Part shown: positions 10,107 through 64,000 of the stretch, piece after piece
How the letters are laid out: the number at the start of each line of letters is the position of its first letter
Position numbering within the stretch: the first letter of the stretch is position 1
Virus record (IMG/VR): IMGVR_UViG_3300044644_001125
Coordinates: 248,001-312,000 of that record
DNA length: 64,000 bases
Reading direction: 5' to 3' (one strand)
Translations under genes and position numbers: made by a program
The notes under the pieces: model-generated
Told to the model about the DNA's origin: nothing
What the model saw: the letters and a program-made list of their open reading frames with translations, nothing else
Database searches by the model: none

Positions 10107-10113
10107 GGAGATA

Positions 10114-35200: not shown

Positions 35201-38200
35201 AATCCAGTTTTTGAAATTCTATCAAACTTCATTGCTACATTAAATAGTCTGACCTTACTATCACCAATTACTGCGATAGCCGAAGCACTTTTTGATCCGG
35301 GTGTATTACCACCAATCAATTCAACTGTTGGTGCTTCTTTATAGCCAATTCCAGCATTTTCAATGATAATATTAGATACCACGCCATTTGATATGTAGGC
35401 TTTTGCAGTGGCACCTACACCAGTTCCTGTTATCACAACAGATGGTGGTTGATTGTAGTTTTCACCACCAGATGCTAAAATTATTTGTTTAACCGTAAAC
35501 GTATTGTTATCAGTCCACCACTTCCATGGATATTGATTTAAAGTATACCAATCATAGATGGTTACCGGTTTATTGGAACCGCCGGTATATGCAACTGGTA
35601 AGTCAAAATCACCAATAGCAATAGACGATTCTTCAGTTGTATCATACTTACTAATATACTCACGAATAGTTGATCGATAGGGTTTAACCTCTTCGATGTA
35701 ACTTTGGAAACTTTGCAAACTATCGTTTTTATAATTCAATGGTTGTTCAAAAGGTCCAACATTATGAACTGCTGTTAAGAAACTGGTTTTAAAAGCCCAA
35801 TCAACATATAACTGTTCCGCAAAAACTGCGCGAACACAAGTGAAGAATAGATTACCCCATTCAGTGGCATTATTACCAATGCAAATATCATGTTTTACTG
35901 CCCGTAAGATATTACGGAGTTCTAAACTAGAATCCATATCATAGCTAATAGAATCAAACGCAGCAGAACTATCATAACCAACTCCAGAGGTAACATCATC
36001 ATACAATTTTGTAGATAATTGAATTGTTCCGTTTTCTCTACCAACCATAGTATAGAAATCAGAGAAAATACCGGCATCTACTGGAACTGCGATGCACTCG
36101 AAGGTTGCCCAACCACCAGATTCGAACTCTTTTATTCTAATCAGATCGCCAATTACTGGATTAATTGTCTTAATTGATACGATTGCTGTGATTTCATTGG
36201 TTACTTTTGAAGAACTATTATAACCAGTTGCCCACCAATCAACGTATGACCAGTATTTGGTAGTATCATATGCTTGCGCTGAACTTCTAACAAATTGTTT
36301 ACTTACTGAATCCCACGCATATATACTCCAATAACCACTAATAGTAGAATCAGAATTAACTAATACAGAATATGGTCTTACTGTCGCGGTTGCATTGCTG
36401 TATTTTTTACCACTACTAATAATATTAGCCTGGATTGCACTACCATTTTTATCAATAATCAGTTGAACAACCGCACCAGTTCCATCACCAGATACGGTCA
36501 CTAATGGTCCTTGATACCCAACCCCTTGATAATTATACGCAGGTATACTGATACTTTCATACACTGGTACGTTTGGTTTATAGCCGTATCCTTGTTTTAC
36601 GATATTAACTGCTGTTACTTTACCATTAGTTAATTCCACACCCAACTCGGCTTGAGTTACTCGAGTAATACCAACATTTTGTAAATCCTGATAGGTATCG
36701 ACTGTTGTATCGTAGTAGTTTAACTCAACGATCGGTGCTTGATCTACCAAATTAAGGTTACTAAAGTTCATGTTACCAGTAAACGGTTCAGTAGTTAAGA
36801 TTGAATTTACATTAGTAATTACCATTTTAAGGGCAGGTAATCTATCAATAAACATACTTTGGCGTGGTCTAAAACTAACACCATATTTCAATTTAGTTGG
36901 TAGTGTATTATCTGGTACTCTATTACCAACAACATCTCTACCAATTACACTATCAATCCACTTTGCTTCTAATTCGTTAGATAATTCAAATGATTCGCTA
37001 CCTTCAGACAATAACTGATATTCGTTATGAACTGGCACTTGATTATATGAATCTTTGAAATATTCAATATTAACCAATGCAGTTTCTGTTGTTAGTACCG
37101 AACCAAAGTTATAAGCTAACATTGCAGCAGGTGAACATAAACCAACAAACGCAATACCAGTACCAATTGGGTTATCAATCGCATTTGCAACATCCAATGC
37201 TGATAAATTTCTACCAATCACAGCATCTGGTATTAATGCCGTGTTTTTAACCCAGTAGTAATACTGCGTTCCAGTGACTACACCAGTTACTGAATTATAC
37301 AACTCTTTAACAACCATAACGGAATCATCTGAGTACAACGGCTGCCCAGAAATACCAGAAGCTAATCCTTCCGTTGTATCTGCCAATGATGCCCATTCTG
37401 AAGGTAATATTGTAGTTTTAACCCATTCATAAACATCGACCGTTGAACCAGTAACTTGAACATTCCAATGGCCTGTCCGATAAGTTAAATCATCTTGTTC
37501 AGCATACATCCATTTTGATTTAGAAATATCCCACCAAAGTGTCCCAACATTCTTATCTGCCCATGCTTGTGATGGTTCTATGATTTGAGTTTCATCATTG
37601 GTACCAATAGAATAGACCGCTGGGTCATACATTGTTTTAAACGTGATTTCCTGTTCAGCAATATTCAATACTTTTAACTTTGAATTATCAACGTAATCAA
37701 CATCTTGAATTTTCAAACTGTTAACATTGTCATATAATGAAATGCTTTTAACATTGCGAGTATCGACTACTTGTTGTTGAGATGCAATTATATCCCAAGC
37801 ACCATTAGAATTGGTATTCGTGAACATACGCAAACATCCCACTAATGTGTCACTAGTCGGTAATGTGTAAGTTGGTGAACCAACAAATATTGATGAATCA
37901 GTGCATGCTAAACTTCCACCAAATGATTCATAAGGACGTAATGTAGGTTTTAATTCTGAAGTTAGTAGGTATTGGTCGCCTTTCTTTTCGAATACATAAA
38001 CTGCACCGGCATATCCACGTTCACTATAGAATGTAGTTCTACCACCATCAAAAGTAGCATTGAATGAATCATAAGTTACATAGTCAGTATTTTTCGCACT
38101 AATTACTATTCTATTGTCACTAATAGCAACACTACTACCAAATTGTTCATTGGTGATATATTCAAAACTTTCAATAGTTTGTGATAATACATACTGAGAA

Positions 38201-41200
38201 TTAACCTTGGTATATACATACGCTTTACCTTGGTCGATAATTGAACTATCTGCATTTGGACTAGTTATAACTAGTGTTGAACCAGTTGGATTGATAGCAA
38301 TCGCATGTCCAAATTTATCACCAGTAGCATCACCAACCATATCATCAAGTTTAACAACCGAACTGTCATTCGATGCGTATATATAAACTGAGCCTTTTGG
38401 CTGATTTTCACCAACTGGATTTCCAACAACTAACGTAGATCCATCAGAAGTCATTACTAACGATTTACCAAATTCGTCCATATCAGTGCTGTTTTCTGGT
38501 AATGTATAAGTGGCGTCACCAAATACCCATTCTGAATTTGTATATCTATAAGTGTATACAATACCATGGTTATTTGTTAACGTGCTATCACCTGGGTGAA
38601 CTGCTGCAGAAACAGCTAAAAGATAATCGGTATCCGATGTTTTACCAAGTGCAACCGCTGTTCCAAACTGAACAGTATTCTCTAAATCTGGACTAACAAA
38701 TGAAGTTGAATATCTCCAGTTATTATCGTAATATTCATACACTGAAATAACACCTTGATTGGTTATATTACTCGGTGTACCAGTAGAATCTGATATGATA
38801 TTTGATGCCTCCTTCCACTTTGTTTTATCAGCAGTGGTATCATTGATACTATCGCCGATAATTTCAACAATAGATTCCAACAATGCATTTGAAGTTTTTA
38901 CAATAGCACCAATTGGATATATTGCAGTATTAGTATACGCACCTCGGTAATTACTACGAATATGAGATGCACTAGGTGACCCAACAATCAAGAATTTATT
39001 GTCTGGTGATATCGCCATCGATTTACCGAATGAACCATCCAATGAGCTACTACCAGTACGAATCCCTGAAATTGGTTCAACTGATTGATACCAATCCAAC
39101 CCAGTAGTTCCAACCGAATAAACTTCAATTCTATTAGAACCAGGAATACTGGTAATAACTTGGTTTAATGTTTTTGCATACACCGTGGTTGTACCAACAC
39201 CAATTGGATTATCACCATAAACTGTAGGACTAACTACTGAATATTGGTCTTTCTTTTGTGATACTTCCCACTTATCAGAATCATTCGCATCAACCCACAG
39301 TTTAGCACCGACTGGCAACGTAGCAGCATACAAATCATCAATATCAGAGTATGATTTATATCTAGCTTTCTTGAAGGTACAAGCATAAATTGGTTTGTTT
39401 TGGTTTAATGTTGGGATTGTAGATAGCAATGAACTATCAATAGAGACAGTATTCCAAGTCACACCAACTACTTTAAATATACCAGAAAACGCAGTGATTG
39501 TTCCTAGTGGTCTGACAGCAAATACATCACCAACTTCATAGGTATGTCTACTAGAAAGTTCAAAATCAATTGTACTGGTTTCTGTGATGTTTACTACGCG
39601 CAACGCAGTATCATTGAATCTAAAGACATTCCAAGAATAATCATCGAATGTTACCCAGATATTGGCATTGTCTTTAATTGCACGGATATCAAGATTTAGA
39701 ATATCATCAATAGTTTTAACCATATATGAAACGTGTTTAGTGTTAACATACCCAGCAGTTCTCGATGGTTCTGTTTCATATGATAACTTATTAATACCAA
39801 CTGTATTACTTGGAGTTAATGTGAAATCAGATGACTTGATTTGGTACGCAATACCATCAGATACGGATGTATCAGTAACTAGTAATGGTTGTGGGTTAAG
39901 TTTTATTTTATTCTTCTCGATATAAAACTCAAATTCTTCGATTGCATCCACCCCACCAAACTGGCCAACTCTAAATGCCCATTCTTCATTAAGAACAATA
40001 CTAGAATCACCAGATCTGCTTAGTTTATCAAATACCTTGGTTACTGCATTAATTGTACCTTTTTCACGAATAAATCCTTGATATAGCTGGAATTGAGTAA
40101 CTGGATCTTCTGCTAAATCTTGCAAATAACCTCTAGGTTGATACCCAATGGCATGCCTTGCTAGAGTTCGTTGTGATTCACCAATACCTTCCGCAGTAGT
40201 ATCGTAATATTCATCAAATTGGTTAATCTTATAATCAAAGTTAGAAACCAATTCCTTTGTTGGGTTTGTATCAAGTTTAGACCAAACTGCATTGTCAAAT
40301 GATTCGGTGCTTGTATGTGATTTAATACAAGTCCAATTTGTTGAACGATAAGCAACAATATCACCTAGTTTGTAATCTTTATATTGTTGCCAAACAACAA
40401 TATTAACATTGTCGAATAAGAATCCTGGGCTTGTGTAATCACCATCCCAATCAACTGTTCTAAATCCCTGTGATTTGATTCTACCTTGTCTATAACCTGT
40501 AGTTTTATCATAGATAACATCGTTGAAAACCGTTCTATCAGAAAATACGGTTACATGCTCTTTTAGAACACAGTACATATTAAGGTAATAAATCCCATCA
40601 GTTGTCGAATCTGGTGTGATGACAATATTTTGGAAAGTTCTAGTTACATTAAGTTGTTCAATCGGGAATACTTGACCATTACTTTTTAAGATTTCGTAAT
40701 CATAAAATCCATCAGTTAAGCTATCAACAACACCACCATTCATATTAATTTCAATTCTACTTGAAATTGGACTTAATGAAATAAGAGATCCAGCTGCCCA
40801 ATTATGCTTCGTCCAGAACATGAATTCTTTACAACTCGTTGTCCAGTTAATAGGCACTCGGTTTTCAGCATCATATCCACTGAATACAAATCCGATAGAT
40901 TTCAAGTAAACTTCATAACCCAACAAGAAATCAACTACTTCTTGAATAGATTCCAAGGTAGTTCCATATAGCATTTGTTTAATAGTAAACTTATTGAATG
41001 ATTTACGATTTTTAGCTACAACTTCGCCGGTTATCGGCAAATTTGACAGCAACTTCCAGTAATCGTGCTCATCATTAAATGTCGTACTTGAATTGGTTTT
41101 TAATGCTCTGTAAAAATGCTGTTCATATCTTACGATTTGACCATTCGCATACGTTACATTTGGTTCCCAATCAGTATAGGCCGCACTAACACCACCAACA

Positions 41201-44200
41201 GAAATGACTTGGTCGGTATTCTGTGGAGTAATAGTCAAATATGGATCTTTACTAGAAGCCAGAGCTTCGTAATAATTAAAGAATTGATTATTTGAGTTAT
41301 ATCCACTAATTACCCAACCAGTATCTGATTTAGTTATCATCACACCACTATACGTTATAGTACGAATGGGTGAACTAACATTGAATATAATGTCATAGTT
41401 TTCAGGTGGAACAAATACTGTACTACCGAGTGTACTTGTTTTACTATCAAGTATATACTTTTGTTGGTCTGTTACTACGAAACCAGATAGTCGGGTAGAT
41501 AACTTCACATCTAAGTTCTTGATTTTTTTCTCAACCAATACTGGGTCGGTACCTTTGGATTTAGCATGGTCAACCAAATAGGTAATCAAACCAGTGGATT
41601 GCACTGTGTTAGTTGGGATAACCAAGTCTGATAAGGTAACAAATACACCACTTGTAGTGTGTACTGTTTGTCCAACCAAATTGGTTTTTGTTCTTGACGA
41701 ATCAAATCTATCTGAAATATATTCAAATGGTTTCATCAAACACATAGCAATACTAACCGTAAACGCCCAGTCTGAACTAGAACGCCAAGCATATTCTACC
41801 GGTGATACATCACCAAATACAAAACTACCTTGTGTTGCATATATGTCATAATTATGAGCTAATCTTGACATCAATGGACTTAGCAATGCACCATGTTCAT
41901 CAACTGGTAAATGATCTAATAAGGTACTACGCTTATATCTAGCATATTCACCTGCTCTTTCACCTTGACGGATAATACCGTCACGTAAATCTTCCCATAG
42001 AATCAAGTTATTGCTTGTATATGGTGCTGGACCATATTCGGATTCCCACCACAACGGCTGTTGTGAAAAACCAAGCATCTCCCATGGGCATCTATGTGGT
42101 CGATCTGTGTCATAAAACCAATTATAAATTCCACGCCAGTACCCAGGCAATCCCTGCGTACTAGTAGGATCTGTCATATTACTATAATTATAAGTGAACG
42201 TATTCGATGAATCATACCAATCATTATTAGTATAAGTCATCTGATATTGTGTAGACCACTTATAGAATTCGGTTTTAATTACAGAATCTATCTCGTCTTT
42301 TGAATACAAGCCAGTGTCGTAATAACCACCCATGATTGAATCCAAATCAAATATATCTGAATTATATTCTTGTTTGATATTGTTATAGATTCTTAATTCC
42401 AATTCTAATAACAAATCATCACGATAGTCTTCATACGCTGCAGTTATACTACCATCATGCCCCTGAATAACCATCCGAGGTGTGACATAAGTATCATCCA
42501 AGAATTTCATTGGTGTGAATTTCTTAAATAATCCCATTGATGTTGGTGTTGCTGGTATATAGTTAACTGACGTTGACAAGTATTCACGAATTTCGACAAT
42601 ATCACCTTCGAATAATTCAGTTAACAATGTAACATAACCGAATACATCATTAAACATGTAGTCGGTTGTATTCAGCAAGTGTGTTGGCTTTAACAACCCA
42701 TCGGCTACTCGATACACGTATACATAAACCGCTGAAGTACTTATTTCTGTCAAATTGATTTTTTTCGACAATGCAAATGTTTTAATTCCAGTATCTTCAA
42801 CTGTATATCTTATTGGCGTATAAGCACCACTACCGAGCATGTCAGAATTTGCAAATGGGCTTTCTGCTGTTTTGGTAGATGTCATCAACGTTATCAATTC
42901 ATCAACTGCATCAACGTTATTCATACCAGCATATTGCGATGCCTGTTCAATGAAGTTATTCTTAAATTCAGTATACATCTTTTTAGCATACTGTATGGAT
43001 TTTATAACGTTGTGAGTTTTATCACATAATACAGTAACTGCCAATGGTGCAAGCCCAGCATGTTTCAAAAATCTCGATGCATACTGTTGGTAATTAGTCA
43101 AGTCACGAAGATTAGACACACCTGGAGTTATCCCAGAAAAATCCGAAAAGAACTCAACTGCTGATGATATATGGTCATCCGCTTGTCCAAGCGTAAATGT
43201 CGTCATTTCTTGATTTAACGGGTTCTTTTCCAACCCAACTGGCATTTGATAATACCCAGTATTTGGATCGATATTAGCAATTATCTTAATAGATACGATA
43301 TCATTAACCGCTAAGTTTTTTGGAAACGTAAACTGATCACCTTCTCTGAAATACGTTCCAGTATAAGGTTTTCCATTTATGTACAATCTAACAATTAGGT
43401 CTGATAACGGTATGTTTGAAAAATCAATGGTAGTAAAGGTTACTACTGTCGTAGCCTCTGTGATTTTTTGACTATCGATGATAGGTTGGATGTACTTGTT
43501 ATCAGTTTTAATCCAGCCATTATCGAATTCTAAGCCAATATTAGTTAGTTTGTAATACCCGGATTCTATCTTTTTTGTTGTAGTTACTTTGTTTATCGCA
43601 TAAGTAAACGTGTCAATACCAAAGTTCCAATTGAACTGGATATCTCCAATGTTACCGATGTTTAGGTAACTTAAACTGAATCCAAGCTGAGTATCTGTTC
43701 TACCATTACCAACTTTATAACTAAGAATTTTAGAACCAGCAAATGTACTACCTGGATAATATTCAGTATTTGAAAAACTAATTTCATTATCGTCGTATAC
43801 ATCAAATAAAGGTGCTTGGTTAACTGCAGTTTTTTGTTGACTTAATACCCATTTAACACCATCAAAATGGAACATTTCACCACCAAAGTTTTTACCATGT
43901 TTGATAAGAACGCATTGGTCAATGTATGGTAATGAATCATCCACCTCTATCAAATGAATTTGTGGAACTATAGTTGTGGTGGTATCAGTTATTGATTGCG
44001 TATTATGGTTGAAGTTCATTAACTGAACTTCGTAAATCTTATTATTGACTAAGTTATCAGTATCTGCGGTTACTAATATTCTAGCACCGTGAAATAAGGT
44101 TTCATTATCAATTTGGTACCCAGAACTACCTTCAATTGTAGAAAAAACATCAGTGGTTAGGGTATCAACAAAATCAACTGGTCTTTTTGCAATCGCACCA

Positions 44201-45807
44201 TAATTGAATAGTCTTAAATTTGACGAGAACTCGATGATAGGACGTTTTGCTCTATTAGTTTCTGGTGCAGAGTATTCTTGCCCACGAATAGCACATGAGT
44301 ACTCAAGAACAGAACGATGGAACCATCGATTGTATCGACTCCATGAATTAGAATCAATACTAGAATGTGATATCGTAATATAATCTTGGTCAGTTGGATA
44401 AGCACTAGCCTCATCAAATGGCTGTGTGTCGAATCCTTCGTTGTCAAAAAGAACATCAGGAACATCTTTAGAAATTCTAGGTGTTACCAAATCGGCAAAT
44501 GGCATCAATGTTATAGACGAACCAACACCACTAACCAACCAAGTACCACTAGCATATGTCGATGGAGTTACTGAACCCCTGAATTCAACAACTAAACCAT
44601 TGGTGAATACAATACCATTGCTACTTGTGTAGTTTTTTAATCCAACGATTTCAGCATTAACATCAATTTCAGTATTAATCTTAATATCGGCAATGATGAA
44701 TCTACCCAATTTATTTGGATCTAATGGGCTTTGATAATATAAGGAATCAGGTGCATCATAAGGAACTTGGAATGTAACAGTTGCATTACTTGTACCATTA
44801 TTCATCACACCTGTGTTATATTCCAACGAAGGTGCTTTAACAACATACCCAATGAATCTCCATTCAGCCGAACCAGTCACAGGTAGGGATATTACATCGC
44901 TTGGTATGTTAGCAATTGCTTCCCATAATCCATTTGAATATACAACAGTCGAACCAATCTTATATTCAGTTCCGGTGATATATTCATTAAATGCAGTTTG
45001 ATATATGAATCTAACGAATTCCCAATCAGTAATTAAATTAGGAACTGTTCTGGTTGCACTTGCAACAATTCGAGTTTTTGCACGAATTAACTGGTTTTCA
45101 TAAACCGCAAGTTGACCTTGGGTATATGCAAGTACTGGATTGTAAGAAATTGAACCGGTATCATACTGCGTTCTAATGATAAAACTATCATTAGGTGTAT
45201 TAACATTAAACTTGTAAGTTTGACCACGATATAGGGTCAATGTTGGATTGTTAACTACATTAGCTACATTCGTGACTTGTGTGAACACAAAAGAATTAGC
45301 AGCAACTGTTACATTGTACTCACTAATTACCTTTGCACTATGCCCAATTACTGGAACTGAAAGAGGACCATCTGGTTCCCAGAAGTATTCACGATAATTG
45401 ATAAATTTATCCCAACTAATTGGTGGATTCCACGAATAATGTTGTTGTGATGTGATATGGTCATCTCTATCATTAGTATTACCAAAGAATTTAAGTTGGT
45501 TCTTTAAATCAATGTAATCATAAAAGTTTTCGATTTTATCGCCATCTGTAAACACCACACCAGGTTCTAACTGATATCTACTACGAAGCGTGTTATCAGA
45601 ATCCAGATAGGTATCAGAACCACTGTATGTTTTTCCGTATCTTCGACCGACATAACCAACTGTCTTTTGTAAAAGACCAGGTTGAATTAATGGATCGACA
45701 GCGGCCGCCATGAATTTGTTGTTTGTTTCCGTTTTAAAAACGCCTGGCAATAAGTCAACAGTTTTTCTTATTGGTAATTGGCTTTCTGGGTAAAATTGTT
45801 CAGTCAT
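32218..45807 (-). CDS. Giant baseplate wedge/structural protein (4529 aa; gp7-like position)
   Basis: Uninterrupted ORF downstream of the gp6-like gene; CBM-like W..Y..G.IV.Y repeats, FG-GAP-like propeller repeats, VKPYRS motif, repeated VYVNG Ig-like units. Confidence 0.7.
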   Translation of the reverse strand: MTEQFYPESQLPIRKTVDLLPGVFKTETNNKFMAAAVDPLIQPGLLQKTVGYVGRRYGKTYSGSDTYLDSDNTLRSRYQLEPGVVFTDGDKIENFYDYIDLKNQLKFFGNTNDRDDHITSQQHYSWNPPISWDKFINYREYFWEPDGPLSVPVIGHSAKVISEYNVTVAANSFVFTQVTNVANVVNNPTLTLYRGQTYKFNVNTPNDSFIIRTQYDTGSISYNPVLAYTQGQLAVYENQLIRAKTRIVASATRTVPNLITDWEFVRFIYQTAFNEYITGTEYKIGSTVVYSNGLWEAIANIPSDVISLPVTGSAEWRFIGYVVKAPSLEYNTGVMNNGTSNATVTFQVPYDAPDSLYYQSPLDPNKLGRFIIADIKINTEIDVNAEIVGLKNYTSSNGIVFTNGLVVEFRGSVTPSTYASGTWLVSGVGSSITLMPFADLVTPRISKDVPDVLFDNEGFDTQPFDEASAYPTDQDYITISHSSIDSNSWSRYNRWFHRSVLEYSCAIRGQEYSAPETNRAKRPIIEFSSNLRLFNYGAIAKRPVDFVDTLTTDVFSTIEGSSGYQIDNETLFHGARILVTADTDNLVNNKIYEVQLMNFNHNTQSITDTTTTIVPQIHLIEVDDSLPYIDQCVLIKHGKNFGGEMFHFDGVKWVLSQQKTAVNQAPLFDVYDDNEISFSNTEYYPGSTFAGSKILSYKVGNGRTDTQLGFSLSYLNIGNIGDIQFNWNFGIDTFTYAINKVTTTKKIESGYYKLTNIGLEFDNGWIKTDNKYIQPIIDSQKITEATTVVTFTTIDFSNIPLSDLIVRLYINGKPYTGTYFREGDQFTFPKNLAVNDIVSIKIIANIDPNTGYYQMPVGLEKNPLNQEMTTFTLGQADDHISSAVEFFSDFSGITPGVSNLRDLTNYQQYASRFLKHAGLAPLAVTVLCDKTHNVIKSIQYAKKMYTEFKNNFIEQASQYAGMNNVDAVDELITLMTSTKTAESPFANSDMLGSGAYTPIRYTVEDTGIKTFALSKKINLTEISTSAVYVYVYRVADGLLKPTHLLNTTDYMFNDVFGYVTLLTELFEGDIVEIREYLSTSVNYIPATPTSMGLFKKFTPMKFLDDTYVTPRMVIQGHDGSITAAYEDYRDDLLLELELRIYNNIKQEYNSDIFDLDSIMGGYYDTGLYSKDEIDSVIKTEFYKWSTQYQMTYTNNDWYDSSNTFTYNYSNMTDPTSTQGLPGYWRGIYNWFYDTDRPHRCPWEMLGFSQQPLWWESEYGPAPYTSNNLILWEDLRDGIIRQGERAGEYARYKRSTLLDHLPVDEHGALLSPLMSRLAHNYDIYATQGSFVFGDVSPVEYAWRSSSDWAFTVSIAMCLMKPFEYISDRFDSSRTKTNLVGQTVHTTSGVFVTLSDLVIPTNTVQSTGLITYLVDHAKSKGTDPVLVEKKIKNLDVKLSTRLSGFVVTDQQKYILDSKTSTLGSTVFVPPENYDIIFNVSSPIRTITYSGVMITKSDTGWVISGYNSNNQFFNYYEALASSKDPYLTITPQNTDQVISVGGVSAAYTDWEPNVTYANGQIVRYEQHFYRALKTNSSTTFNDEHDYWKLLSNLPITGEVVAKNRKSFNKFTIKQMLYGTTLESIQEVVDFLLGYEVYLKSIGFVFSGYDAENRVPINWTTSCKEFMFWTKHNWAAGSLISLSPISSRIEINMNGGVVDSLTDGFYDYEILKSNGQVFPIEQLNVTRTFQNIVITPDSTTDGIYYLNMYCVLKEHVTVFSDRTVFNDVIYDKTTGYRQGRIKSQGFRTVDWDGDYTSPGFLFDNVNIVVWQQYKDYKLGDIVAYRSTNWTCIKSHTSTESFDNAVWSKLDTNPTKELVSNFDYKINQFDEYYDTTAEGIGESQRTLARHAIGYQPRGYLQDLAEDPVTQFQLYQGFIREKGTINAVTKVFDKLSRSGDSSIVLNEEWAFRVGQFGGVDAIEEFEFYIEKNKIKLNPQPLLVTDTSVSDGIAYQIKSSDFTLTPSNTVGINKLSYETEPSRTAGYVNTKHVSYMVKTIDDILNLDIRAIKDNANIWVTFDDYSWNVFRFNDTALRVVNITETSTIDFELSSRHTYEVGDVFAVRPLGTITAFSGIFKVVGVTWNTVSIDSSLLSTIPTLNQNKPIYACTFKKARYKSYSDIDDLYAATLPVGAKLWVDANDSDKWEVSQKKDQYSVVSPTVYGDNPIGVGTTTVYAKTLNQVITSIPGSNRIEVYSVGTTGLDWYQSVEPISGIRTGSSSLDGSFGKSMAISPDNKFLIVGSPSASHIRSNYRGAYTNTAIYPIGAIVKTSNALLESIVEIIGDSINDTTADKTKWKEASNIISDSTGTPSNITNQGVISVYEYYDNNWRYSTSFVSPDLENTVQFGTAVALGKTSDTDYLLAVSAAVHPGDSTLTNNHGIVYTYRYTNSEWVFGDATYTLPENSTDMDEFGKSLVMTSDGSTLVVGNPVGENQPKGSVYIYASNDSSVVKLDDMVGDATGDKFGHAIAINPTGSTLVITSPNADSSIIDQGKAYVYTKVNSQYVLSQTIESFEYITNEQFGSSVAISDNRIVISAKNTDYVTYDSFNATFDGGRTTFYSERGYAGAVYVFEKKGDQYLLTSELKPTLRPYESFGGSLACTDSSIFVGSPTYTLPTSDTLVGCLRMFTNTNSNGAWDIIASQQQVVDTRNVKSISLYDNVNSLKIQDVDYVDNSKLKVLNIAEQEITFKTMYDPAVYSIGTNDETQIIEPSQAWADKNVGTLWWDISKSKWMYAEQDDLTYRTGHWNVQVTGSTVDVYEWVKTTILPSEWASLADTTEGLASGISGQPLYSDDSVMVVKELYNSVTGVVTGTQYYYWVKNTALIPDAVIGRNLSALDVANAIDNPIGTGIAFVGLCSPAAMLAYNFGSVLTTETALVNIEYFKDSYNQVPVHNEYQLLSEGSESFELSNELEAKWIDSVIGRDVVGNRVPDNTLPTKLKYGVSFRPRQSMFIDRLPALKMVITNVNSILTTEPFTGNMNFSNLNLVDQAPIVELNYYDTTVDTYQDLQNVGITRVTQAELGVELTNGKVTAVNIVKQGYGYKPNVPVYESISIPAYNYQGVGYQGPLVTVSGDGTGAVVQLIIDKNGSAIQANIISSGKKYSNATATVRPYSVLVNSDSTISGYWSIYAWDSVSKQFVRSSAQAYDTTKYWSYVDWWATGYNSSSKVTNEITAIVSIKTINPVIGDLIRIKEFESGGWATFECIAVPVDAGIFSDFYTMVGRENGTIQLSTKLYDDVTSGVGYDSSAAFDSISYDMDSSLELRNILRAVKHDICIGNNATEWGNLFFTCVRAVFAEQLYVDWAFKTSFLTAVHNVGPFEQPLNYKNDSLQSFQSYIEEVKPYRSTIREYISKYDTTEESSIAIGDFDLPVAYTGGSNKPVTIYDWYTLNQYPWKWWTDNNTFTVKQIILASGGENYNQPPSVVITGTGVGATAKAYISNGVVSNIIIENAGIGYKEAPTVELIGGNTPGSKSASAIAVIGDSKVRLFNVAMKFDRISKTGLYQSLYNTETFIATGYTSVFNLMYAPLNEKNRITVYINDKLILSSEYTVELVIPAGNANIATSGMIIFNNNPIVGDVIVVNYEKHDSLLDSVNRISKYYQPMSGMKGNQLSQLITGVDFGGVQVQGTTFDVTGGWDSQPWFTDNWDSVEQSSDYYYVCDGIANPVIATTVTLPFVPVAGQHINIYVKRESWKSVKQYGLKSTAYTLYDGSMPSVIRLDDIAYTSQWDSTSTINPYAQMPTFIGDGVSATIDIGSYFDTIQGDTLIFRPEESDGSLVINDPNIVDTNMSGGSLERLNNAYTTATGLKAEEIIIEGGKFISPENVSATEENVPGQVLDSLSIKVFDTKSTGSTPLHSTVFISDGITTTYSIGLPIIEFSSVIVTVNKVKKSIDTHYTINLTNNTVKFVLPVTAGAIIEITAIGVGGVAILDSKSFVADGKSAKFATNAKFKDTTSVYVTVNGISTDASFGSTTGKKITGKTEVTVNPMPTVSDDVKVVCFGANANVDFDTSIARINEQTFIYTDNPEFTLSMFAVEPTNHQYTPMIVNVNGSALTGVDTTYGVYTGSTAQFKIELGSGYATPSNIKVYVNGVLKSFLVDYVFNEEMTLVTIDSLVINDVVLIENNSNAEYSINGNTLIISSELTTNDVVNVVWFTQYQTMQLLTDEHVGGKASYALAMKPIDSSYVWVYVNGVKLTPIRDYYLSDDKTKVYLLDTTSESDMVKVVLFGSKLCSTKSYEISKDMLNVFRYNRYSIGTIQLAKDLNYYDTEILVTDASLLSIPVAARNQPGTVLINGERIEYLMLTDNTLSQLRRGSMGTAIAELYTAGTDVADVSIQERIPYNETEMKESFMIDGSTRSVGPLSYIPVKSVRTNWAAGNIPTGYGPCDQVEVFVGGRRLRKNPMHVFNESLGSTSPRADELLDAEFSVDGTSNYIRLTDSVLDSIPVNASVNVVVYRKVGKVWYEQTATAASAGITLLENNTPMAKFISQKTTAMIG

Positions 45808-55169: not shown

Positions 55170-56018
55170 ATGGCTGACCACGTGGTACCAAAAGCAAAGT
55201 ATTTGACAAACAAAGAGTTACTAAAAGCAATACACGCAAGTAAAAATACTTTTTGTTCGTACACAAAACCTGAATATGGATTCTATGACTGTATCGTAAC
55301 TGATATCGGTGAAATCAATGAAGATACAATCAACGATGCTAAACAAAGCCGTGCTACTCGATTATCAAGAGCAGCACATGAAAAAGCCCAACTAGAAGCT
55401 GGTAAGAAAATCCCAGCAATCGAATTTGAAGTCGATTACACCACCATTTGTGAAAATGATTTAGTATTCAGAATCATGACGTTTGACCACATTCCCCTAC
55501 AGCCAGACCGTAAGAAAACGGTTAAAACTGTTGCTGATGCTCGTGCCAAAGTAAACTTCCCACCTTTCCAACATTGGAAATTCAATGAGAATAAAGAGTT
55601 AGTTTGTGTTGGTAAAAGTCATTGGGATGGTGATGTCGATACTGGTCATTTCAGTATCACAAAAGGTCAGATGTCTAACTTGCTAGGTAAGATGTTAATG
55701 AAATTGGCTGAAAGATATTCTTCACGTAGCAACGTTCGCGGATATACCTATAATGATGAGATGCGAGGCCAGGCAGTACTTCAGTTAACGCAGGTTGCAC
55801 TCCAATTCGACGAGTCAAAATCATCTAATCCATTCAGTTTCTATACACAATGTTGCACGAACGCCTTCTTACGTGTGATAAACATTGAGAAAAGAAATCG
55901 TGAAATTCGTGATGACATCCTTGAAAGTGCAGGTTTAAACCCTAGTCATACTAGAATGAATTCGGATACCTATGGAGAAAGAATGAATGATGGTTATACT
56001 TGGATTGATGTAGACTAA
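55170..56018 (+). CDS. Late transcription sigma factor (gp55-like)
   Basis: YLTNKELL; KLAERYS..RGYTYNDEMRGQA..QFDESKSSNPFSFYTQ..NAFLRVINIEK. Confidence 0.85.
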   Translation: MADHVVPKAKYLTNKELLKAIHASKNTFCSYTKPEYGFYDCIVTDIGEINEDTINDAKQSRATRLSRAAHEKAQLEAGKKIPAIEFEVDYTTICENDLVFRIMTFDHIPLQPDRKKTVKTVADARAKVNFPPFQHWKFNENKELVCVGKSHWDGDVDTGHFSITKGQMSNLLGKMLMKLAERYSSRSNVRGYTYNDEMRGQAVLQLTQVALQFDESKSSNPFSFYTQCCTNAFLRVINIEKRNREIRDDILESAGLNPSHTRMNSDTYGERMNDGYTWIDVD

Positions 56019-56892: not shown

Positions 56893-56974
56893 AATATATA
56901 GTATAATGGACCTATAGTCAATACCTAAAAGATAATTAAATCACAATTGACTTCCATTATCTTTTAGTTATAAT
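56893..56974. promoter_or_regulatory. Divergent sigma70-type promoter pair containing an inverted pair of CTAAAAGATAAT boxes
   Basis: Minus strand TTGACT(56921-16)-17-TATATT; plus strand TTGACT(56947)-16-TATAAT; boxes at 56925 (+) and 56956 (-). Confidence 0.65.
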
Positions 56975-60587: not shown

Positions 60588-60884
60588 ATGAAATTCGAAA
60601 TAGCACCTAAATCAACTGAGATAGAATCCAACTGGTTTGATGCAAAACTCTATTGCTTCTCCCTTAACATAGATGGTAAGACTGGTTGGAGATTACCAAC
60701 AAGGGCAGAACTAAATGAAATTTATGAATCTGATAATGATTTCGTTATTTGCACCTACTACTGGACATCTGCTGAATTTAGCGGCACCGGTGCTTGGACT
60801 CAACTATTCATTAATGGGATCCAGAACTTCCGCACGAAGGATTACGACAAAAATCAGGTTAGAGCAGTAAGGGACTTAGCATGA
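60588..60884 (+). CDS. Short DUF1566/Lcl-like (CLec-fold) protein 1
   Basis: W.DA..YC..L...GWRLPT..EL..YWTS..AW...F..G.Q....K....VRAVR. Confidence 0.8.
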   Translation: MKFEIAPKSTEIESNWFDAKLYCFSLNIDGKTGWRLPTRAELNEIYESDNDFVICTYYWTSAEFSGTGAWTQLFINGIQNFRTKDYDKNQVRAVRDLA

Positions 60885-61177
60885 AATTTGAAATAGCACC
60901 GAAAGAAACAGAGACCCAAGCCAATTGGGATGATGCCCGTTTGTATTGCTTTGCTCTTAATATAGATGAGAAAGTTGGCTGGAGATTACCTACTATTAAA
61001 GAGTTAAACTATATAAATCGTGTGATTAATGATCTTTCAACCGAAGATTACTGGTCATCAATAGAACGACCAGACAAAAGATACGCAGAATGCTATACCA
61101 CAATCGATGGTGGTTATACGGTCAATACATTAAAACACGATTTAGGCTATGTTAGCGCAGTAAGGGACTTAGTATGA
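60881..61177 (+). CDS. Short DUF1566/Lcl-like protein 2
   Basis: MKFEIAPK..GWRLPTIKEL..YWSS..VSAVRDL; ATGA overlap. Confidence 0.8.
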   Translation: MKFEIAPKETETQANWDDARLYCFALNIDEKVGWRLPTIKELNYINRVINDLSTEDYWSSIERPDKRYAECYTTIDGGYTVNTLKHDLGYVSAVRDLV

Positions 61178-61473
61178 ACTTTGAAATAGCACCCAAAGAA
61201 TACGAGATACGAGGAAACTGGGATGATTCCAGATTCTATTGCTTTGCTCTTAATATAGATGGAAAATCAGATTGGAGATTACCAACTAAAGAAGAACTTA
61301 ACGAAATCTTCCAATCAGCACATGATTTCGAGGATGGCTCGTATTGGTCTTCTACTCCTTCCGATGTTGATGAGGTAGGCGTGCGGGTTCAAATATTCGA
61401 TACTAGTGGATTCGAATACTCCGCAATAAAGTCCAGTCCCTACGGATATACCAGAGCCGTCAGAACAATCTAA
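61174..61473 (+). CDS. Short DUF1566/Lcl-like protein 3
   Basis: MNFEIAPK..DWRLPTKEEL..YWSST..TRAVR; ATGA overlap. Confidence 0.8.
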   Translation: MNFEIAPKEYEIRGNWDDSRFYCFALNIDGKSDWRLPTKEELNEIFQSAHDFEDGSYWSSTPSDVDEVGVRVQIFDTSGFEYSAIKSSPYGYTRAVRTI

Positions 61474-62103: not shown

Positions 62104-62523
62104 ATGAAAGATAAGGTAATCGTATATACTGATGGTGGGTGCATTCCTAATCCCGGAAAGGGTGGTTGGGGTGCTGTACTTATGTGCAACAACAAAGAAA
62201 AAGAACTCTTTGGTGGTGTAGATGGTACTACTAATAACCGCATGGAACTAATGGCAGCAATCCAAGCATTAAATGCCTTAACCAGACCATGTGATGTCAC
62301 AATCTATAGTGATTCAAAATATGTTGTAGATGGAATCACTAAATGGTATCCCAATTGGATTAAGAACGGTCGTACCAATTTCGTTAATCCAGACTTATGG
62401 CATGCACTGGCTGCAGCAGCTAAACCTCACAATGTCACTTGGCAATGGATCAAAGGCCATTCAGGAATTCCTGGCAATGAACGTGCCGATGAACTGGCTA
62501 TGCGAGCTATTGAGTATTGTTAA
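62104..62523 (+). CDS. rnhA: Ribonuclease HI
   Basis: [46 protein letters not shown]. Confidence 0.95.
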
Positions 62524-62611
62524 CTGTTTGTTGACTATTATTTTCTTAATAGTTAACAATAAGTGCTGTTTTTCTCTACTAAATAGAGTATAATCAATCT
62601 ATATCAGAACA

Positions 62612-62801
62612 TTACCGAGACCATCTCAAATATATTTTCACAAAAGTGTTGACAACAGGGATTAACTAAGTTACAATTAATCATACTAAAGAATTACCCA
62701 AAAGCAGTTTACCGAGACCATCTCAAATCCATACCGACACCAAGTCTATATTTTCTTTTACTTACAGAGACCATCTCAAATCATTACCGACACCAAGTCT
62801 A
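62612..62801 (+). repeat. Direct repeats: TTACCGAGACCATCTCAAAT x3 and TACCGACACCAAGTCTA x2
   Basis: Copies at 62612, 62709 and 62762; the last two are 40-nt composites. Confidence 0.9.
62649..62677 (+). promoter_or_regulatory. Sigma70-type promoter with no ORF downstream
   Basis: TTGACA-17-TACAAT. Confidence 0.75.
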
Positions 62802-62849
62802 CTCGCACAAAAGCAATTACTCAATTATCTTTTAGGCACCCGCCAAACT

Positions 62850-63345
62850 TGCTCACCGAATTACTAGATAGAACATAGAAAGGTGAGAGAATTGCTAAGA
62901 AAGCCGCGCACAGGCGACCATTACGTGCCCTTAAACCCTGGTCTACTTGAATCACAGGGGATGGAAGTTCCGACATTAGCAACGGAGATATAGTTCACTA
63001 CCCCACCAGATGAGTTATGGGATATGCCTTCATACAACCCATTTGAACTATAGCAAAAACGAATAACCAAGGCTAAAGATGGGTTGAGAAAACCCACGTT
63101 TACTAGATAAGGTAGCTGTTGTCTAGTAAGCCACCGTCAGATTAATAAGACTGAGCTCGAGGTACCGGCTGACCGCCTCTGTAATGCTCTACATGCTACT
63201 GTGATGCGATGCTTGTACGCAGAACCCTTGGACGTTTCAGTTCCACAATTAGAAATGTCCATTGTCCTTTGAATTAACCCGAGTTTTTCGGGTTAAGATG
63301 TTCAGCTCCACAACCCGCAGTGAGGGCTCCGCTGGCGCGTCGCTT
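62850..63345 (+). ncRNA. Putative large structured non-coding RNA; family not identified
   Basis: GC-richer ORF-free tract with many helices: 62852/62882, 62989/63044, 63080/63091, 63100/63120, 63153-63189 nested, 63230/63252, 63274/63288; upstream promoter. Confidence 0.7.
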
Positions 63346-63405
63346 TAATAATAGATTTAATTATTGATTTTAATAATTGTAGGAGCATATAAGATTAAAT
63401 GAATT

Positions 63406-63911
63406 CTAAAAGATAATGTACCTAATAGATACCTGCTTAAGCCACGCGCACATACATTTTTAGATGCATTCGAACCCATACATTTTAGCTGTTTCCATTC
63501 GCGCACATACATTTTAGATTCCATTATAGCTTTTTACCAGATGCACACATACATTATAAACTCCATACGAACACATACATTTTAAACTAAAAGATAATTC
63601 AATTAATAACTCAACTATAAGATCATCTATAAGACCATTAATATAAACATCAATAAGAACATCATAACTAAAAGATAATAGATCAGTAATTCACATCATC
63701 TATAAGACAATTATCTTTTAGTAATCGACATCATCTATAAGACAATCATTAATACATTATCTTTTAGTATTATTCTTTTAAATGGATAGCTACGTCTGGA
63801 GTTTATTCATTATCTTTTAGTTTCTATTATCTTTTAATGGATAACTGCGTCTAGTGGTTTCTATTATCTTTTAGTAATGATCATCAGGTGGATGGGTTCA
63901 TTATCTTTTAG
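63406..63911. repeat. AT-rich iteron-like cluster (candidate replication origin)
   Basis: CTAAAAGATAAT x3 (+) then ATTATCTTTTAG x6 (one variant); CACATACATT-type unit x5; CATCTATAAGAC x3. Confidence 0.8.
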
Positions 63912-63954
63912 TGCGTTCGTCAAATAAATAGGTTCCGGTTCATCGCGGGTTTGC

Positions 63955-63962
63955 TATAAATA
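63955..63962 (+). promoter_or_regulatory. T4-type late promoter for a gene starting at 63998, beyond the window
   Basis: Perfect TATAAATA, AAGGA RBS, ATG at 63998. Confidence 0.65.
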
Positions 63963-64000
63963 CTTGCAATACCCCATTCGAATAAGGAACCCAATCAATG

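What the first reader, a model, noticed from the sequence alone, without database searches (positions are those of the whole stretch)
63406..63911. Iteron cluster whose 12-mer flips orientation around ~63690
Seen: CTAAAAGATAAT at 63406, 63587 and 63668, then its reverse complement at 63710, 63756, 63809, 63826 (variant), 63863 and 63900. Other repeats are nested by zone: CACATACATT-type units (63449-63583), CATCTATAAGAC (63624-63743) and two AATGGATARCTRCGTCT copies. Inference: a polar protein-loading platform such as an origin, a centromere-like site or a packaging signal.
Basis: partly seen in the sequence, partly recalled or inferred. Interest (0 to 1): 0.6.

Follow-up and report, generated by a model that had tools for sequence, protein, structure and literature searches.

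The report
Protein-binding repeat array in phage module
The orientation-flipping cluster of a 12-letter DNA word is real, but it is one of four copies of a larger non-coding unit (RNA gene, AT-rich stretch, repeats) in a giant lake-water phage, and the word occurs 139 times across that genome, so it is most likely a docking array for a phage DNA-binding protein and possibly one of several replication origins.

Summary
It is far above chance: 25 copies of the word (up to 1 mismatch) in the window against 0.94 expected. With 9 copies in 600 bp it is the densest cluster in the 327-kb genome.

The cluster is not unique. It is the 3' half of one of four paralogous ~1.2-kb non-coding modules (about 77% identical). 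Each module has the same order:
- a strong sigma70-type promoter;
- a ~0.5-kb structured RNA, whose 5' third is Rfam Polynucleobacter-1;
- the most AT-rich stretch of the genome;
- five or six module-specific direct repeats;
- converging arrays of the 12-mer.

The 12-mer is a genome-wide word: 139 exact copies, 103 of them in the 9.5% non-coding DNA. It occurs in both orientations, often beside or inside early promoters, and shows no genome-wide polarity.

About 30 related phage contigs carry the RNA without any array. The array is therefore a clade-specific insertion. Lake metatranscriptome contigs cover the RNA but not the array.

Best reading (confidence 0.4): a loading platform for a phage DNA-binding protein that forms an origin of the T4 oriE or oriF kind. 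The main rival (0.3) is an operator array, roadblock or titration sink. Centromere and packaging readings have no support.

The parts
62104..62523 (+). RNase H gene, the upstream neighbour of module D
   Evidence: Pfam RNase_H, E 1.6e-46
62649..62677 (+). Strong sigma70-type promoter P2 (TTGACA, 17 nt, TACAAT) that drives the module RNA. A weaker promoter P1 lies at 62531-62560.
   Evidence: 11 of 12 consensus matches. The -35 element is invariant in all four paralogs.
62610..62810 (+). Transcribed leader with module-specific repeats: GAGACCATCTCAA three times and CGACACCAAGTCTA twice
   Evidence: These words occur only in the four modules. The leader is covered by metatranscriptome contigs.
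62824..62835 (-). A 12-mer copy (ATTATCTTTTAG on the + strand) that abuts the 5' end of the conserved RNA
   Evidence: It is invariant in all four paralogs.
62836..63335 (+). Structured RNA of about 0.5 kb. Positions 62903-63053 match Rfam RF01718 (Polynucleobacter-1). A 25-nt invariant core lies at 63153-63177.
   Evidence: RF01718 scores 80.1 bits against a cut-off of 37, and all four paralogs score 68-80 bits. The core is found in 44 IMG/VR loci. 19 of 29 predicted pairs show compensatory changes. RNA-library contigs cover 62617-63184. The 3' end is inferred from paralog conservation.
63344..63403 (.). AT-rich block, 85% A+T, a candidate unwinding element
   Evidence: It is the highest 60-bp AT content in the whole genome. 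All four modules hold windows at or above the 99.9th percentile.
63406..63679 (+). Left arm: 12-mer CTAAAAGATAAT at 63406, 63587 and 63668
   Evidence: The three copies are identical and held in position in all four paralogs.
63449..63581 (+). Five module-specific direct repeats of the CACATACATT type, with start-to-start spacing of 27, 28, 42 and 26
   Evidence: The zone 63521-63595 is 96% identical among the paralogs, as conserved as the RNA core.
63612..63746 (+). CATCTATAAGAC / CTATAAGACAAT units, which are degenerate 12-mers. A near-palindrome lies at 63700-63721, where the orientation flips.
63710..63911 (-). Right arm: reverse 12-mers at 63710, 63756, 63809, 63826 (variant), 63863 and 63900
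   Evidence: Close relatives L017, L019 and L021 gain or lose copies by indels of one repeat unit.
63781..63852 (+). The 3' edge of the paralogous module (AATGGATAGCTACGTCT, 63781-63797) and a tandem second copy found only in D (63836-63852)
   Evidence: Similarity among the paralogs ends at about 63797.
63955..63963 (+). Late-promoter-like TATAAATAC, 35 nt before the start codon of the downstream gene X (ATG at 63998)
   Evidence: ATAAATAC and CTAAATAC are the 8-mers enriched upstream of genes in this genome. A gp55-like late sigma factor lies at 55170-56018.

Best explanation
The 506-bp stretch is a dense array of binding sites for a phage-encoded, sequence-specific DNA-binding protein. It forms the 3' half of one of four paralogous non-coding modules in a 327-kb freshwater T4-type jumbo phage.

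Module order:
- early sigma70 promoter or promoters;
- a ~0.5-kb structured RNA;
- the most AT-rich stretch of the genome;
- five or six module-specific direct repeats (CACATACATT type);
- 12-mer sites that converge, several forward copies followed by reverse copies.

Proposed mechanism: the general 12-mer-binding protein also sits at about 100 intergenic places, many of them on early promoters. This resembles DnaA boxes, which serve both oriC and promoters. That protein and a second factor that reads the module-specific repeats load next to the AT-rich block. Transcription arriving from the strong upstream promoter helps to open the block or to prime synthesis there. Each module would then work as one of several replication origins, as in T4 (oriE: early promoter plus 12-nt repeats; oriF and oriG: promoter plus unwinding element).

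Shown:
- the repeats, their excess over chance and their conservation;
- the four copies;
- the genome-wide, intergenic, orientation-free distribution of the 12-mer;
- the promoter, the RNA and the AT extreme;
- RNA-library contigs over the RNA but none over the array.

Inferred:
- that a protein binds the word, and which protein it is;
- that replication starts here.
For: - The cluster is real and is the densest in the genome.
- Four paralogous modules share the same order and the same flip.
- The left-arm 12-mers are invariant in all four. 12-mer columns are 85% invariant against 59% for the rest of the array.
- The iteron zone 63521-63595 is 96% identical among paralogs, equal to the RNA core.
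- 103 of 139 copies of the 12-mer lie in the 9.5% non-coding DNA, with no bias toward gene direction.
- The word recurs at fixed places in early promoters, and all 7 close inverted pairs outside the modules (start-to-start 26-31 bp) are convergent; no divergent pair lies within 80 bp.
- A strong promoter lies upstream.
- The genome-maximum AT block lies between the RNA and the first 12-mer.
- CACATACATT-type and the other nested repeats occur only in the modules.
- T4 has at least 5 origins. oriE depends on an early promoter and has a cluster of 12-nt repeats (PMC3016281).
- Copy D sits beside RNase H, a PD-(D/E)XK nuclease and Rad50/Mre11 homologues.
- In copy A the array faces the 3' end of a convergent gene, so it cannot be a promoter region for a downstream gene.
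Against: - There are no replication data of any kind.
- No initiator of the Rep3 or lambda-O type and no MotA/AsiA were found. The record is 92% complete and divergent proteins could be missed.
- The main word is not origin-specific. About a quarter of its copies lie in or beside early promoters.
- The repeats are neither evenly spaced nor in helical phase.
- About 30 related contigs carry the RNA with no array, with a gene starting directly after it. The RNA therefore has a function of its own and need not be a primer.
- GC skew follows transcription and marks no origin.
Confidence: 0.4

Rival explanations
1. Operator array, roadblock or titration sink. The 12-mer is the operator of a phage regulator of early promoters. 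The array downstream of a very strongly transcribed RNA gene that lacks an intrinsic terminator would stop read-through into late genes. Alternatively it would buffer the free concentration of the regulator, as datA does for DnaA.
For: - The 12-mer lies in the spacer and -10 region, or 2 nt upstream of the -35 element, in about 30 of 121 intergenic promoter-like sites.
- Other arrays sit on promoters at genome 134.05, 221.75, 41.04 and 104.4 kb.
- No intrinsic terminator follows the RNA.
- Three of the four arrays lie between the RNA and virion or late-type genes.
- RNA-library contigs stop before the array.
- The number of copies changes by indels of one repeat unit among close relatives.
Against: - Relatives manage without any array.
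- The module-specific direct repeats and the extreme AT block are left unexplained.
- Contigs cannot show where a transcript ends.
Confidence: 0.3
2. A recombination-prone repeat region with no dedicated function. It would resemble the PeSL cassettes of T4-type phages or the four long repeat regions of Campylobacter phages CP21 and CP220. The 12-mers would be fragments of the phage's promoter cassette, multiplied by slippage and exchange between copies.
For: - The 12-mer is part of a repeated early-promoter and gene-end cassette. 19 genes use its TAA as their stop codon.
- Indels of one repeat unit occur among relatives.
- One module is inverted relative to the others.
- Metagenome assemblies break in the module.
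- CP21-type phages have four bipartite repeat regions with variable unit numbers and stray units elsewhere in the genome (PMC4546147).
- PeSLs are sites of exchange (PMC2839356 and PMC4122927).
Against: - Three 12-mers and most CACATACATT units are held in position and invariant in paralogs that are only about 77% identical overall. That indicates selection or targeted conversion, not decay.
- The array holds no promoter above chance.
Confidence: 0.15
3. The array is transcribed as a 3' extension of the RNA or as an antisense RNA, and it acts at the RNA level. For example, the inverted 12-mers could pair with each other.
For: - If transcribed, the inverted 12-mers pair in the predicted fold.
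- A 12-mer also lies at the 5' edge of the RNA.
Against: - The fold is not better than shuffles (z = -1.5).
- No RNA-library contig covers 63273-63985, although the RNA and both flanking genes are covered.
- Genome-wide, the word has no orientation relative to transcription.
Confidence: 0.08
4. A centromere-like site or a packaging (pac) signal.
For: - Dense, converging repeats are typical of such sites.
- Copy A lies in the gap of a split large-terminase gene.
Against: - There are four copies.
- The word has 139 copies.
- No ParB-like gene was found.
- From established knowledge of the family, T4-type phages package by headful from concatemers without a unique site.
- Copy D lies far from the terminase pieces.
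Confidence: 0.05

Closest known systems
Bacteriophage T4 oriE (early promoter plus a cluster of 12-nt 'iterons')
   Same: - A T4-type phage, with a gp55-like late sigma factor and Rad50/Mre11, PolB and RNase H homologues.
- Several candidate origin loci per genome.
- An early sigma70 promoter upstream.
- A cluster of 12-nt repeats whose role is unproven even in T4 (PMC3016281).
   Different: - T4's repeats are evenly spaced and direct. Here the spacing is irregular and the orientation flips.
- The word is genome-wide.
- A 0.5-kb structured RNA and a second set of repeats belong to the unit.
- No sequence similarity or RepEA/RepEB homology was tested.
Repeat regions RR1-RR4 of Campylobacter group II phages CP21, CP220 and CPt10
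   Same: - Four long non-coding repeat regions in a T4-related genome.
- Two arms of repeat units, direct or inverted, around unique sequence.
- The number of units varies between close relatives.
- Stray units occur elsewhere in the genome (PMC4546147).
   Different: - The units there are 72-86 bp, against 12 bp here.
- No RNA gene is described there.
- No DNA similarity to any phage record was found.
PeSL cassettes (early promoter plus stem-loop) of T4-type phages
   Same: - A repeated, highly conserved early-promoter cassette between small genes of plastic regions.
- An AT-rich element upstream of the -35 element (PMC2839356).
- Outside the modules the 12-mer is part of such cassettes.
   Different: The cluster itself holds no promoter above chance and no terminator stem-loop. 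It is an array of the word alone, together with other repeats.
DnaA boxes at oriC, datA and promoters; ColE1 RNA II
   Same: One asymmetric word is used in both orientations, scattered at promoters and concentrated next to an AT-rich unwinding element. A long structured transcript from a sigma70 promoter ends at the candidate origin, with RNase H encoded next door. This comparison rests on established knowledge and is an analogy only.
   Different: No homology. No initiator has been identified. No evidence exists for an R-loop or for RNase H processing.
Rfam RF01718, Polynucleobacter-1 RNA motif (for the adjacent RNA)
   Same: All four module RNAs match the full 141-position model at 68-80 bits against a cut-off of 37. 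The habitat, fresh water, agrees with the original description (PMC2864571).
   Different: The motif is only the 5' third of an RNA of about 0.45-0.5 kb. The most conserved part, the 25-nt invariant core at 63153-63177 with its covarying helices, lies outside the Rfam model.

Membership tests
Iteron-type origin (plasmid or lambda type) | Three or more direct repeats of one unit, in the same orientation, regularly spaced | tested here: inconclusive
   Five CACATACATT-type units share one orientation, but their spacing is 27, 28, 42 and 26. The 12-mers are irregular and in both orientations.
Iteron-type origin (plasmid or lambda type) | Adjacent AT-rich unwinding element | tested here: met
   Positions 63344-63403 are 85% A+T, the genome maximum for 60-bp windows.
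Iteron-type origin (plasmid or lambda type) | Cognate initiator gene (Rep or O type), usually adjacent | tested here: not met
   No Rep3_N or Phage_rep_O match in the genome. The four modules share no neighbouring gene. The record is 92% complete.
Iteron-type origin (plasmid or lambda type) | Replication starts at the site | not testable with these tools
   Only assembled contigs of public runs were available, with no raw-read depth.
T4 oriE-type origin | Dependence on a nearby early (sigma70) promoter | tested here: met
   A promoter is present: TTGACA, 17 nt, TACAAT at 62649-62677, conserved in the paralogs. Dependence itself was not tested.
T4 oriE-type origin | [quoted passage not shown] | tested here: not met
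   The repeats are 12 nt long, but the spacing is 17 to 181 nt and the orientation flips.
T4 oriE-type origin | RepEA and RepEB homologues nearby | not tested
   No reference sequence or model was at hand, and the original paper is not held.
Centromere (parS-type) | Partner ParB-type protein and one or a few clustered sites | tested here: not met
   No ParB_N match. The word has 139 exact copies.
Packaging signal (pac or cos) | A single site, usually in or next to the terminase genes | tested here: not met
   There are four copies, and only A lies near terminase pieces.
Packaging signal (pac or cos) | Defined DNA ends at the site | not testable with these tools
   Contigs cannot show molecule ends.
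Polar chromosome word (KOPS or Chi type) | Strand bias that switches at the origin or terminus across the genome | tested here: not met
   Forward and reverse counts are similar in nearly every 20-kb bin, and there is no bias relative to gene direction.
PeSL regulatory cassette | Sigma70 promoter plus terminator stem-loop between ORFs | tested here: not met
   This result is for the cluster: promoter-like hits are at the level of shuffles and no terminator-like site is found. Many 12-mers elsewhere do sit in promoter or gene-end cassettes.
CP21-type repeat regions | Several long bipartite non-coding repeat regions with variable unit number | tested here: met
   There are four modules. 12-mers lie on both sides of the unique RNA sequence, and unit number varies among relatives.
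CP21-type repeat regions | 72-86 bp units with the CP21 core consensus, or sequence relatedness | tested here: not met
   The units are 12 bp. There is no blastn match to any phage record.
Rfam RF01718 (adjacent RNA) | Score at or above the gathering cut-off over the full model | tested here: met
   80.1, 75.9, 69.7 and 68.3 bits against a cut-off of 37, over model positions 1-141.

The most novel reading that the evidence does not exclude
A widespread, previously unrecognised ~0.5-kb structured phage RNA, of which the orphan Rfam motif Polynucleobacter-1 is only the 5' third, has been multiplied to four copies in one jumbo-phage clade. There it is coupled to a DNA platform (AT-rich block, specific iterons and arrays of a genome-wide operator) to form a new kind of RNA-linked replication and regulation hub. 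The structured transcript and the protein array would act together at the DNA, for example through RNA-primed or RNA-gated origin firing.
Probability: 0.15. Interest if true: 0.85.

Novelty: new variant of a known kind. Interest (0 to 1): 0.6.

Why it matters
If the modules are origins, they would give a sequence-defined, four-fold example of how T4-type jumbo phages start replication. That question is still open even for the oriE repeats of T4 itself.

Whatever their role, the 12-mer defines a regulon-like set of about 140 sites for an unknown phage DNA-binding protein. That set can be tested directly by DAP-seq or EMSA.

The work also places an orphan Rfam motif inside a much larger phage RNA that appears in contigs from lake RNA libraries and is found in at least 44 viral contigs. 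This gives the RNA a genomic context and makes its function approachable.

Tried and rejected
- **Phage records:** DNA similarity searches, both distant mode on the module and near mode on a neighbouring gene block, gave no match.
- **tRNA or tmRNA in the window:** none.
- **Rfam at E up to 1 on all four modules:** only RF01718, and nothing in the array.
- **Coding potential of the array:** only short ORFs that are not shared among the paralogs, and indels that are not multiples of three. Rejected.
- **RNA structure of the array:** not better than shuffles, z = -1.5.
- **12-mer as a directional promoter:** rejected. Its orientation relative to genes is 51 against 52, and no -10 element lies at a fixed distance.
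- **12-mer as the T4-type late promoter:** rejected. The late-promoter-like word here is CTAAATAC or ATAAATAC.
- **MotA, AsiA, ParB, Rep3 and lambda-O families:** no match in the genome. The MotA and AsiA searches had no positive control.
- **GC skew:** it follows transcription and gives no origin signal.
- **Regulator gene next to other 12-mer arrays:** none was evident.
- **More genomes of the 12-mer clade:** only six loci on five short contigs of 72 kb or less, so conservation of module number could not be checked.
- **Read evidence:** only assembled contigs were available, so depth, ends and strand could not be used.
- **Not used:** structure and complex prediction. No protein-protein claim is made.
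- The one read-laying run used 3,601 letters.

Full report
**1. The observation**

Every coordinate in the finding is correct. CTAAAAGATAAT stands on the + strand at 63406, 63587 and 63668. Its reverse complement stands at 63710, 63756, 63809, 63826 (one mismatch), 63863 and 63900.

The window holds 25 copies with up to one mismatch, against 0.94 expected from dinucleotide shuffles.

The nested repeats are also real. They are the CACATACATT units, the CATCTATAAGAC units and two AATGGATARCTRCGTCT copies.

The CATCTATAAGAC units are degenerate copies of the 12-mer itself. The stretch therefore holds 17 sites with up to three mismatches in 620 bp, ten times the genome density.

**2. What genome this is**

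The window is bases 248001-312000 of a single 327,256-bp IMG/VR virus record. The record is 38% G+C, linear, and estimated 92% complete.

Its genes mark a T4-type jumbo myovirus:
- a gp55-like late sigma factor;
- Rad50/Mre11 homologues;
- a family B DNA polymerase with an intein;
- RNase H;
- baseplate and virion proteins.

Public runs that hold the stretch are lake and freshwater metagenomes. No phage record in GenBank resembles it at the DNA level.

**3. The cluster is one of four**

A self-comparison shows that window 62576-63797 is one of four copies of a ~1.2-kb non-coding module, 77-78% identical:
- A: genome 34305-35398, inverted;
- B: 165149-166216;
- C: 232415-233563;
- D: 310576-311797, which is the finding.

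All four have the same order:
- one or two sigma70-type promoters, in D the TTGACA, 17 nt, TACAAT promoter at 62649-62677;
- a leader with module-specific repeats;
- one 12-mer;
- a conserved RNA of about 0.5 kb;
- an AT-rich block;
- five or six direct CACATACATT-type repeats;
- 12-mers that point rightwards;
- 12-mers that point leftwards.

In module orientation the patterns are +++------ (D), ++++-- (C), +++-- (B) and +++++- (A). D is the densest cluster of the word in the genome.

Conservation among the paralogs has two peaks. One is the RNA core at 63126-63224 (94-96%). The other is the iteron zone at 63521-63595 (96%).

The three left-arm 12-mers are identical and in the same place in all four copies. 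Across the array, 12-mer columns are 85% invariant against 59% for the remaining columns, Fisher p = 1.3e-4.

Close relatives of copy D (L017, L019, L021) differ from it mainly by indels of one repeat unit that add or remove 12-mers.

**4. The 12-mer is a genome-wide word**

There are 139 exact copies and 249 with up to one mismatch. By a crude ORF map, 103 of the 139 lie in the 9.5% of the genome that is non-coding.

The word has no preferred direction relative to genes (51 against 52). It has no polarity along the genome. It is common in the early, small-gene regions and rare in the structural-gene blocks.

Recurrent contexts are:
- TTGACA, 8 nt, then the word, whose last three letters begin the -10 hexamer (TAGAAT);
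- the inverted word 2 nt upstream of the -35 element;
- the word inside a 17-nt spacer.

About 30 of 121 intergenic promoter-like sites carry it.

Nineteen genes use the TAA at positions 2-4 of the word as their stop codon. Four small Lcl_C-type genes end in LKDN-stop, which is the word read in frame 1.

All seven close inverted pairs outside the modules (start-to-start 26-31 bp) are convergent. No divergent pair lies within 80 bp. The flip in the cluster has the same sense.

The other repeats of the cluster occur only in the four modules.

An exact, asymmetric, intergenic word that does not depend on orientation is best read as the site of a DNA-binding protein. This is an inference. No binding was tested.

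**5. The neighbour: a large structured RNA**

Rfam's Polynucleobacter-1 model (RF01718) matches 62903-63053 at 80.1 bits and matches all four modules.

The motif is only part of a larger RNA. A 25-nt stretch at 63153-63177, outside the Rfam model, is invariant in the 18 IMG/VR loci found with it. A 21-nt piece of it is present in 44 IMG/VR loci with G+C from 32 to 51%.

An alignment of 20 diverse copies gives helices in which 19 of 29 predicted pairs show compensatory changes.

Contigs from three lake metatranscriptome libraries cover window 62617-63184, which is the leader and the RNA. None covers 63273-63985. One of these libraries also has contigs on both flanking genes. Contigs cannot prove absence or transcript ends, and RNA libraries can hold DNA.

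In about 30 relatives that lack the 12-mer, the RNA is followed within some tens of bases by an ORF that begins MKI(T/N)(D/E). No repeats lie between them. That ORF is homologous to the gene after copy D: 39% identity, E = 8e-16.

The ~600-bp array is therefore an insertion specific to the small clade that also has the genome-wide 12-mer.

**6. Origin-like features**

The 60-bp window at 63344-63403, between the RNA and the first 12-mer, is 85% A+T. That is the maximum for the whole genome, and all four modules contain windows at or above the 99.9th percentile.

The module thus carries a promoter-driven transcript, an extreme AT block, specific direct repeats and arrays of a general site. These are the parts list of an origin.

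T4 itself fires at least five origins. oriF and oriG use a promoter plus an unwinding element. oriE depends on an early promoter and carries a cluster of 12-nt repeats whose role is still undefined (PMC3016281).

Copy D lies next to RNase H and recombination-replication genes.

In copy A the array faces the 3' end of a convergent ORF. It therefore cannot simply be the control region of a downstream gene.

Against the origin reading:
- no initiator family was found;
- the repeats are not evenly spaced;
- the 12-mer is not origin-specific;
- there are no replication data.

**7. Rivals**

- **Operator array (0.3).** An array acting as a roadblock or titration sink explains the promoter contexts, the lack of a terminator after the RNA and the position between an early RNA gene and late-type genes. 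It does not explain the module-specific repeats or the AT extreme.
- **Recombination-prone repeat region (0.15).** This would be of the PeSL or CP21 kind (PMC2839356, PMC4122927, PMC4546147). It fits the unit indels, the inverted copy and the assembly breaks. It does not fit the positional invariance of the sites.
- **RNA-level role of the array (0.08).** Unlikely.
- **Centromere or packaging (0.05).** No support.

**8. Verdict**

Its picture of one polar landmark is wrong: there are four such modules, and the word is a genome-wide site.

I commit to an origin-like loading platform at confidence 0.4.

The feature is a new variant of known kinds, namely the T4 oriE repeats and the CP21-type repeat regions. 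The adjacent RNA, an extended Polynucleobacter-1, is the more novel object.

Noticed in passing
window 62836-63335; also L001-L003 and L009-L052: The orphan Rfam motif Polynucleobacter-1 is the 5' third of a phage RNA of about 0.45-0.5 kb. A 25-nt stretch outside the Rfam model is invariant in the 18 IMG/VR loci found with it, and a 21-nt piece of it is present in 44 IMG/VR loci (G+C 32-51%). Helices outside the model covary. Lake metatranscriptome contigs cover the RNA.
   Followed up: partly
L015:2652-3086 and L015:3575-4615; window 63998 onwards: In relatives the RNA lies between a SegE-like GIY-YIG endonuclease gene (Pfam E 3.8e-36) and an ORF that starts MKI(T/N)(D/E)(I/L). The gene after copy D starts MKMSDVDVLIE and shares the next ~100 residues. 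From memory, such N-termini recall the capsid-targeting sequences of T4 internal head proteins. This was not tested.
   Followed up: partly
genome 32647-41040 (locus L059), outside the window: The large terminase looks split. One ORF carries a weak N-terminal ATPase-domain match. An ORF 5.7 kb further on carries intein-splicing and terminase nuclease-domain matches. Module A, three opposite-strand genes and Hint/DUF7487 ORFs lie in between. All matches are below Pfam's cut-offs.
   Followed up: partly
window 7935-11844: The family B DNA polymerase ends in an intein-splicing domain at the end of ORF 7935-10106. A second ORF, 10114-11844, follows directly. This may be a split or intein-interrupted polymerase.
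   Followed up: no
window 60588-61473; genome 159.9-161.2, 230.3-232.4 and 236.7-238.7 kb: There are dozens of tandem small paralogs of about 70-100 aa (Pfam Lcl_C, motif GWRLPT). Arrays of them lie upstream of modules A, B, C and D. Four of them end in LKDN-stop, which is the 12-mer read in frame 1.
   Followed up: partly
window 56015 and 60453, and 17 other places in the genome: The TAA at positions 2-4 of the 12-mer is the stop codon of 19 ORFs of 60 codons or more. These include the late sigma factor and the Rad50-like gene.
   Followed up: yes
whole genome; window 63955-63963: TATAAATA, the T4 late promoter, occurs only 7 times against about 56 expected. The 8-mers enriched upstream of genes are CTAAATAC and ATAAATAC, which suggests a shifted late-promoter consensus.
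   Followed up: partly
genome 77-101 kb, outside the window: About 20-30 early transcription units share a nearly identical cassette. It consists of TTGACA, 8 nt, the 12-mer, AAT, and then a conserved leader ending in GCACTACGGAGTAAAC. It resembles a PeSL-like cassette.
   Followed up: partly
genome 134054-134482, outside the window: This is the second-densest 12-mer array: 7 copies, all in one orientation. It includes two promoters in which the word fills the 17-nt spacer (TTGACA, 4 nt, word, 1 nt, TACAAT). It lies upstream of a 400-aa gene whose family was not searched.
   Followed up: partly
window 56925-56967: A convergent pair of 12-mers sits exactly in the divergent promoter region where transcription switches from the minus to the plus strand (genome 304.9 kb), about 6 kb left of module D.
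   Followed up: no
window 32218-45807 (minus strand): A single ORF of 4,529 codons lies in the virion-gene block. It was not analysed.
   Followed up: no
genome 44868-44974, outside the window: A 12-mer followed by ATAAATAC lies about 20 nt before a tRNA-Thr gene. The genome holds only three tRNA genes.
   Followed up: no
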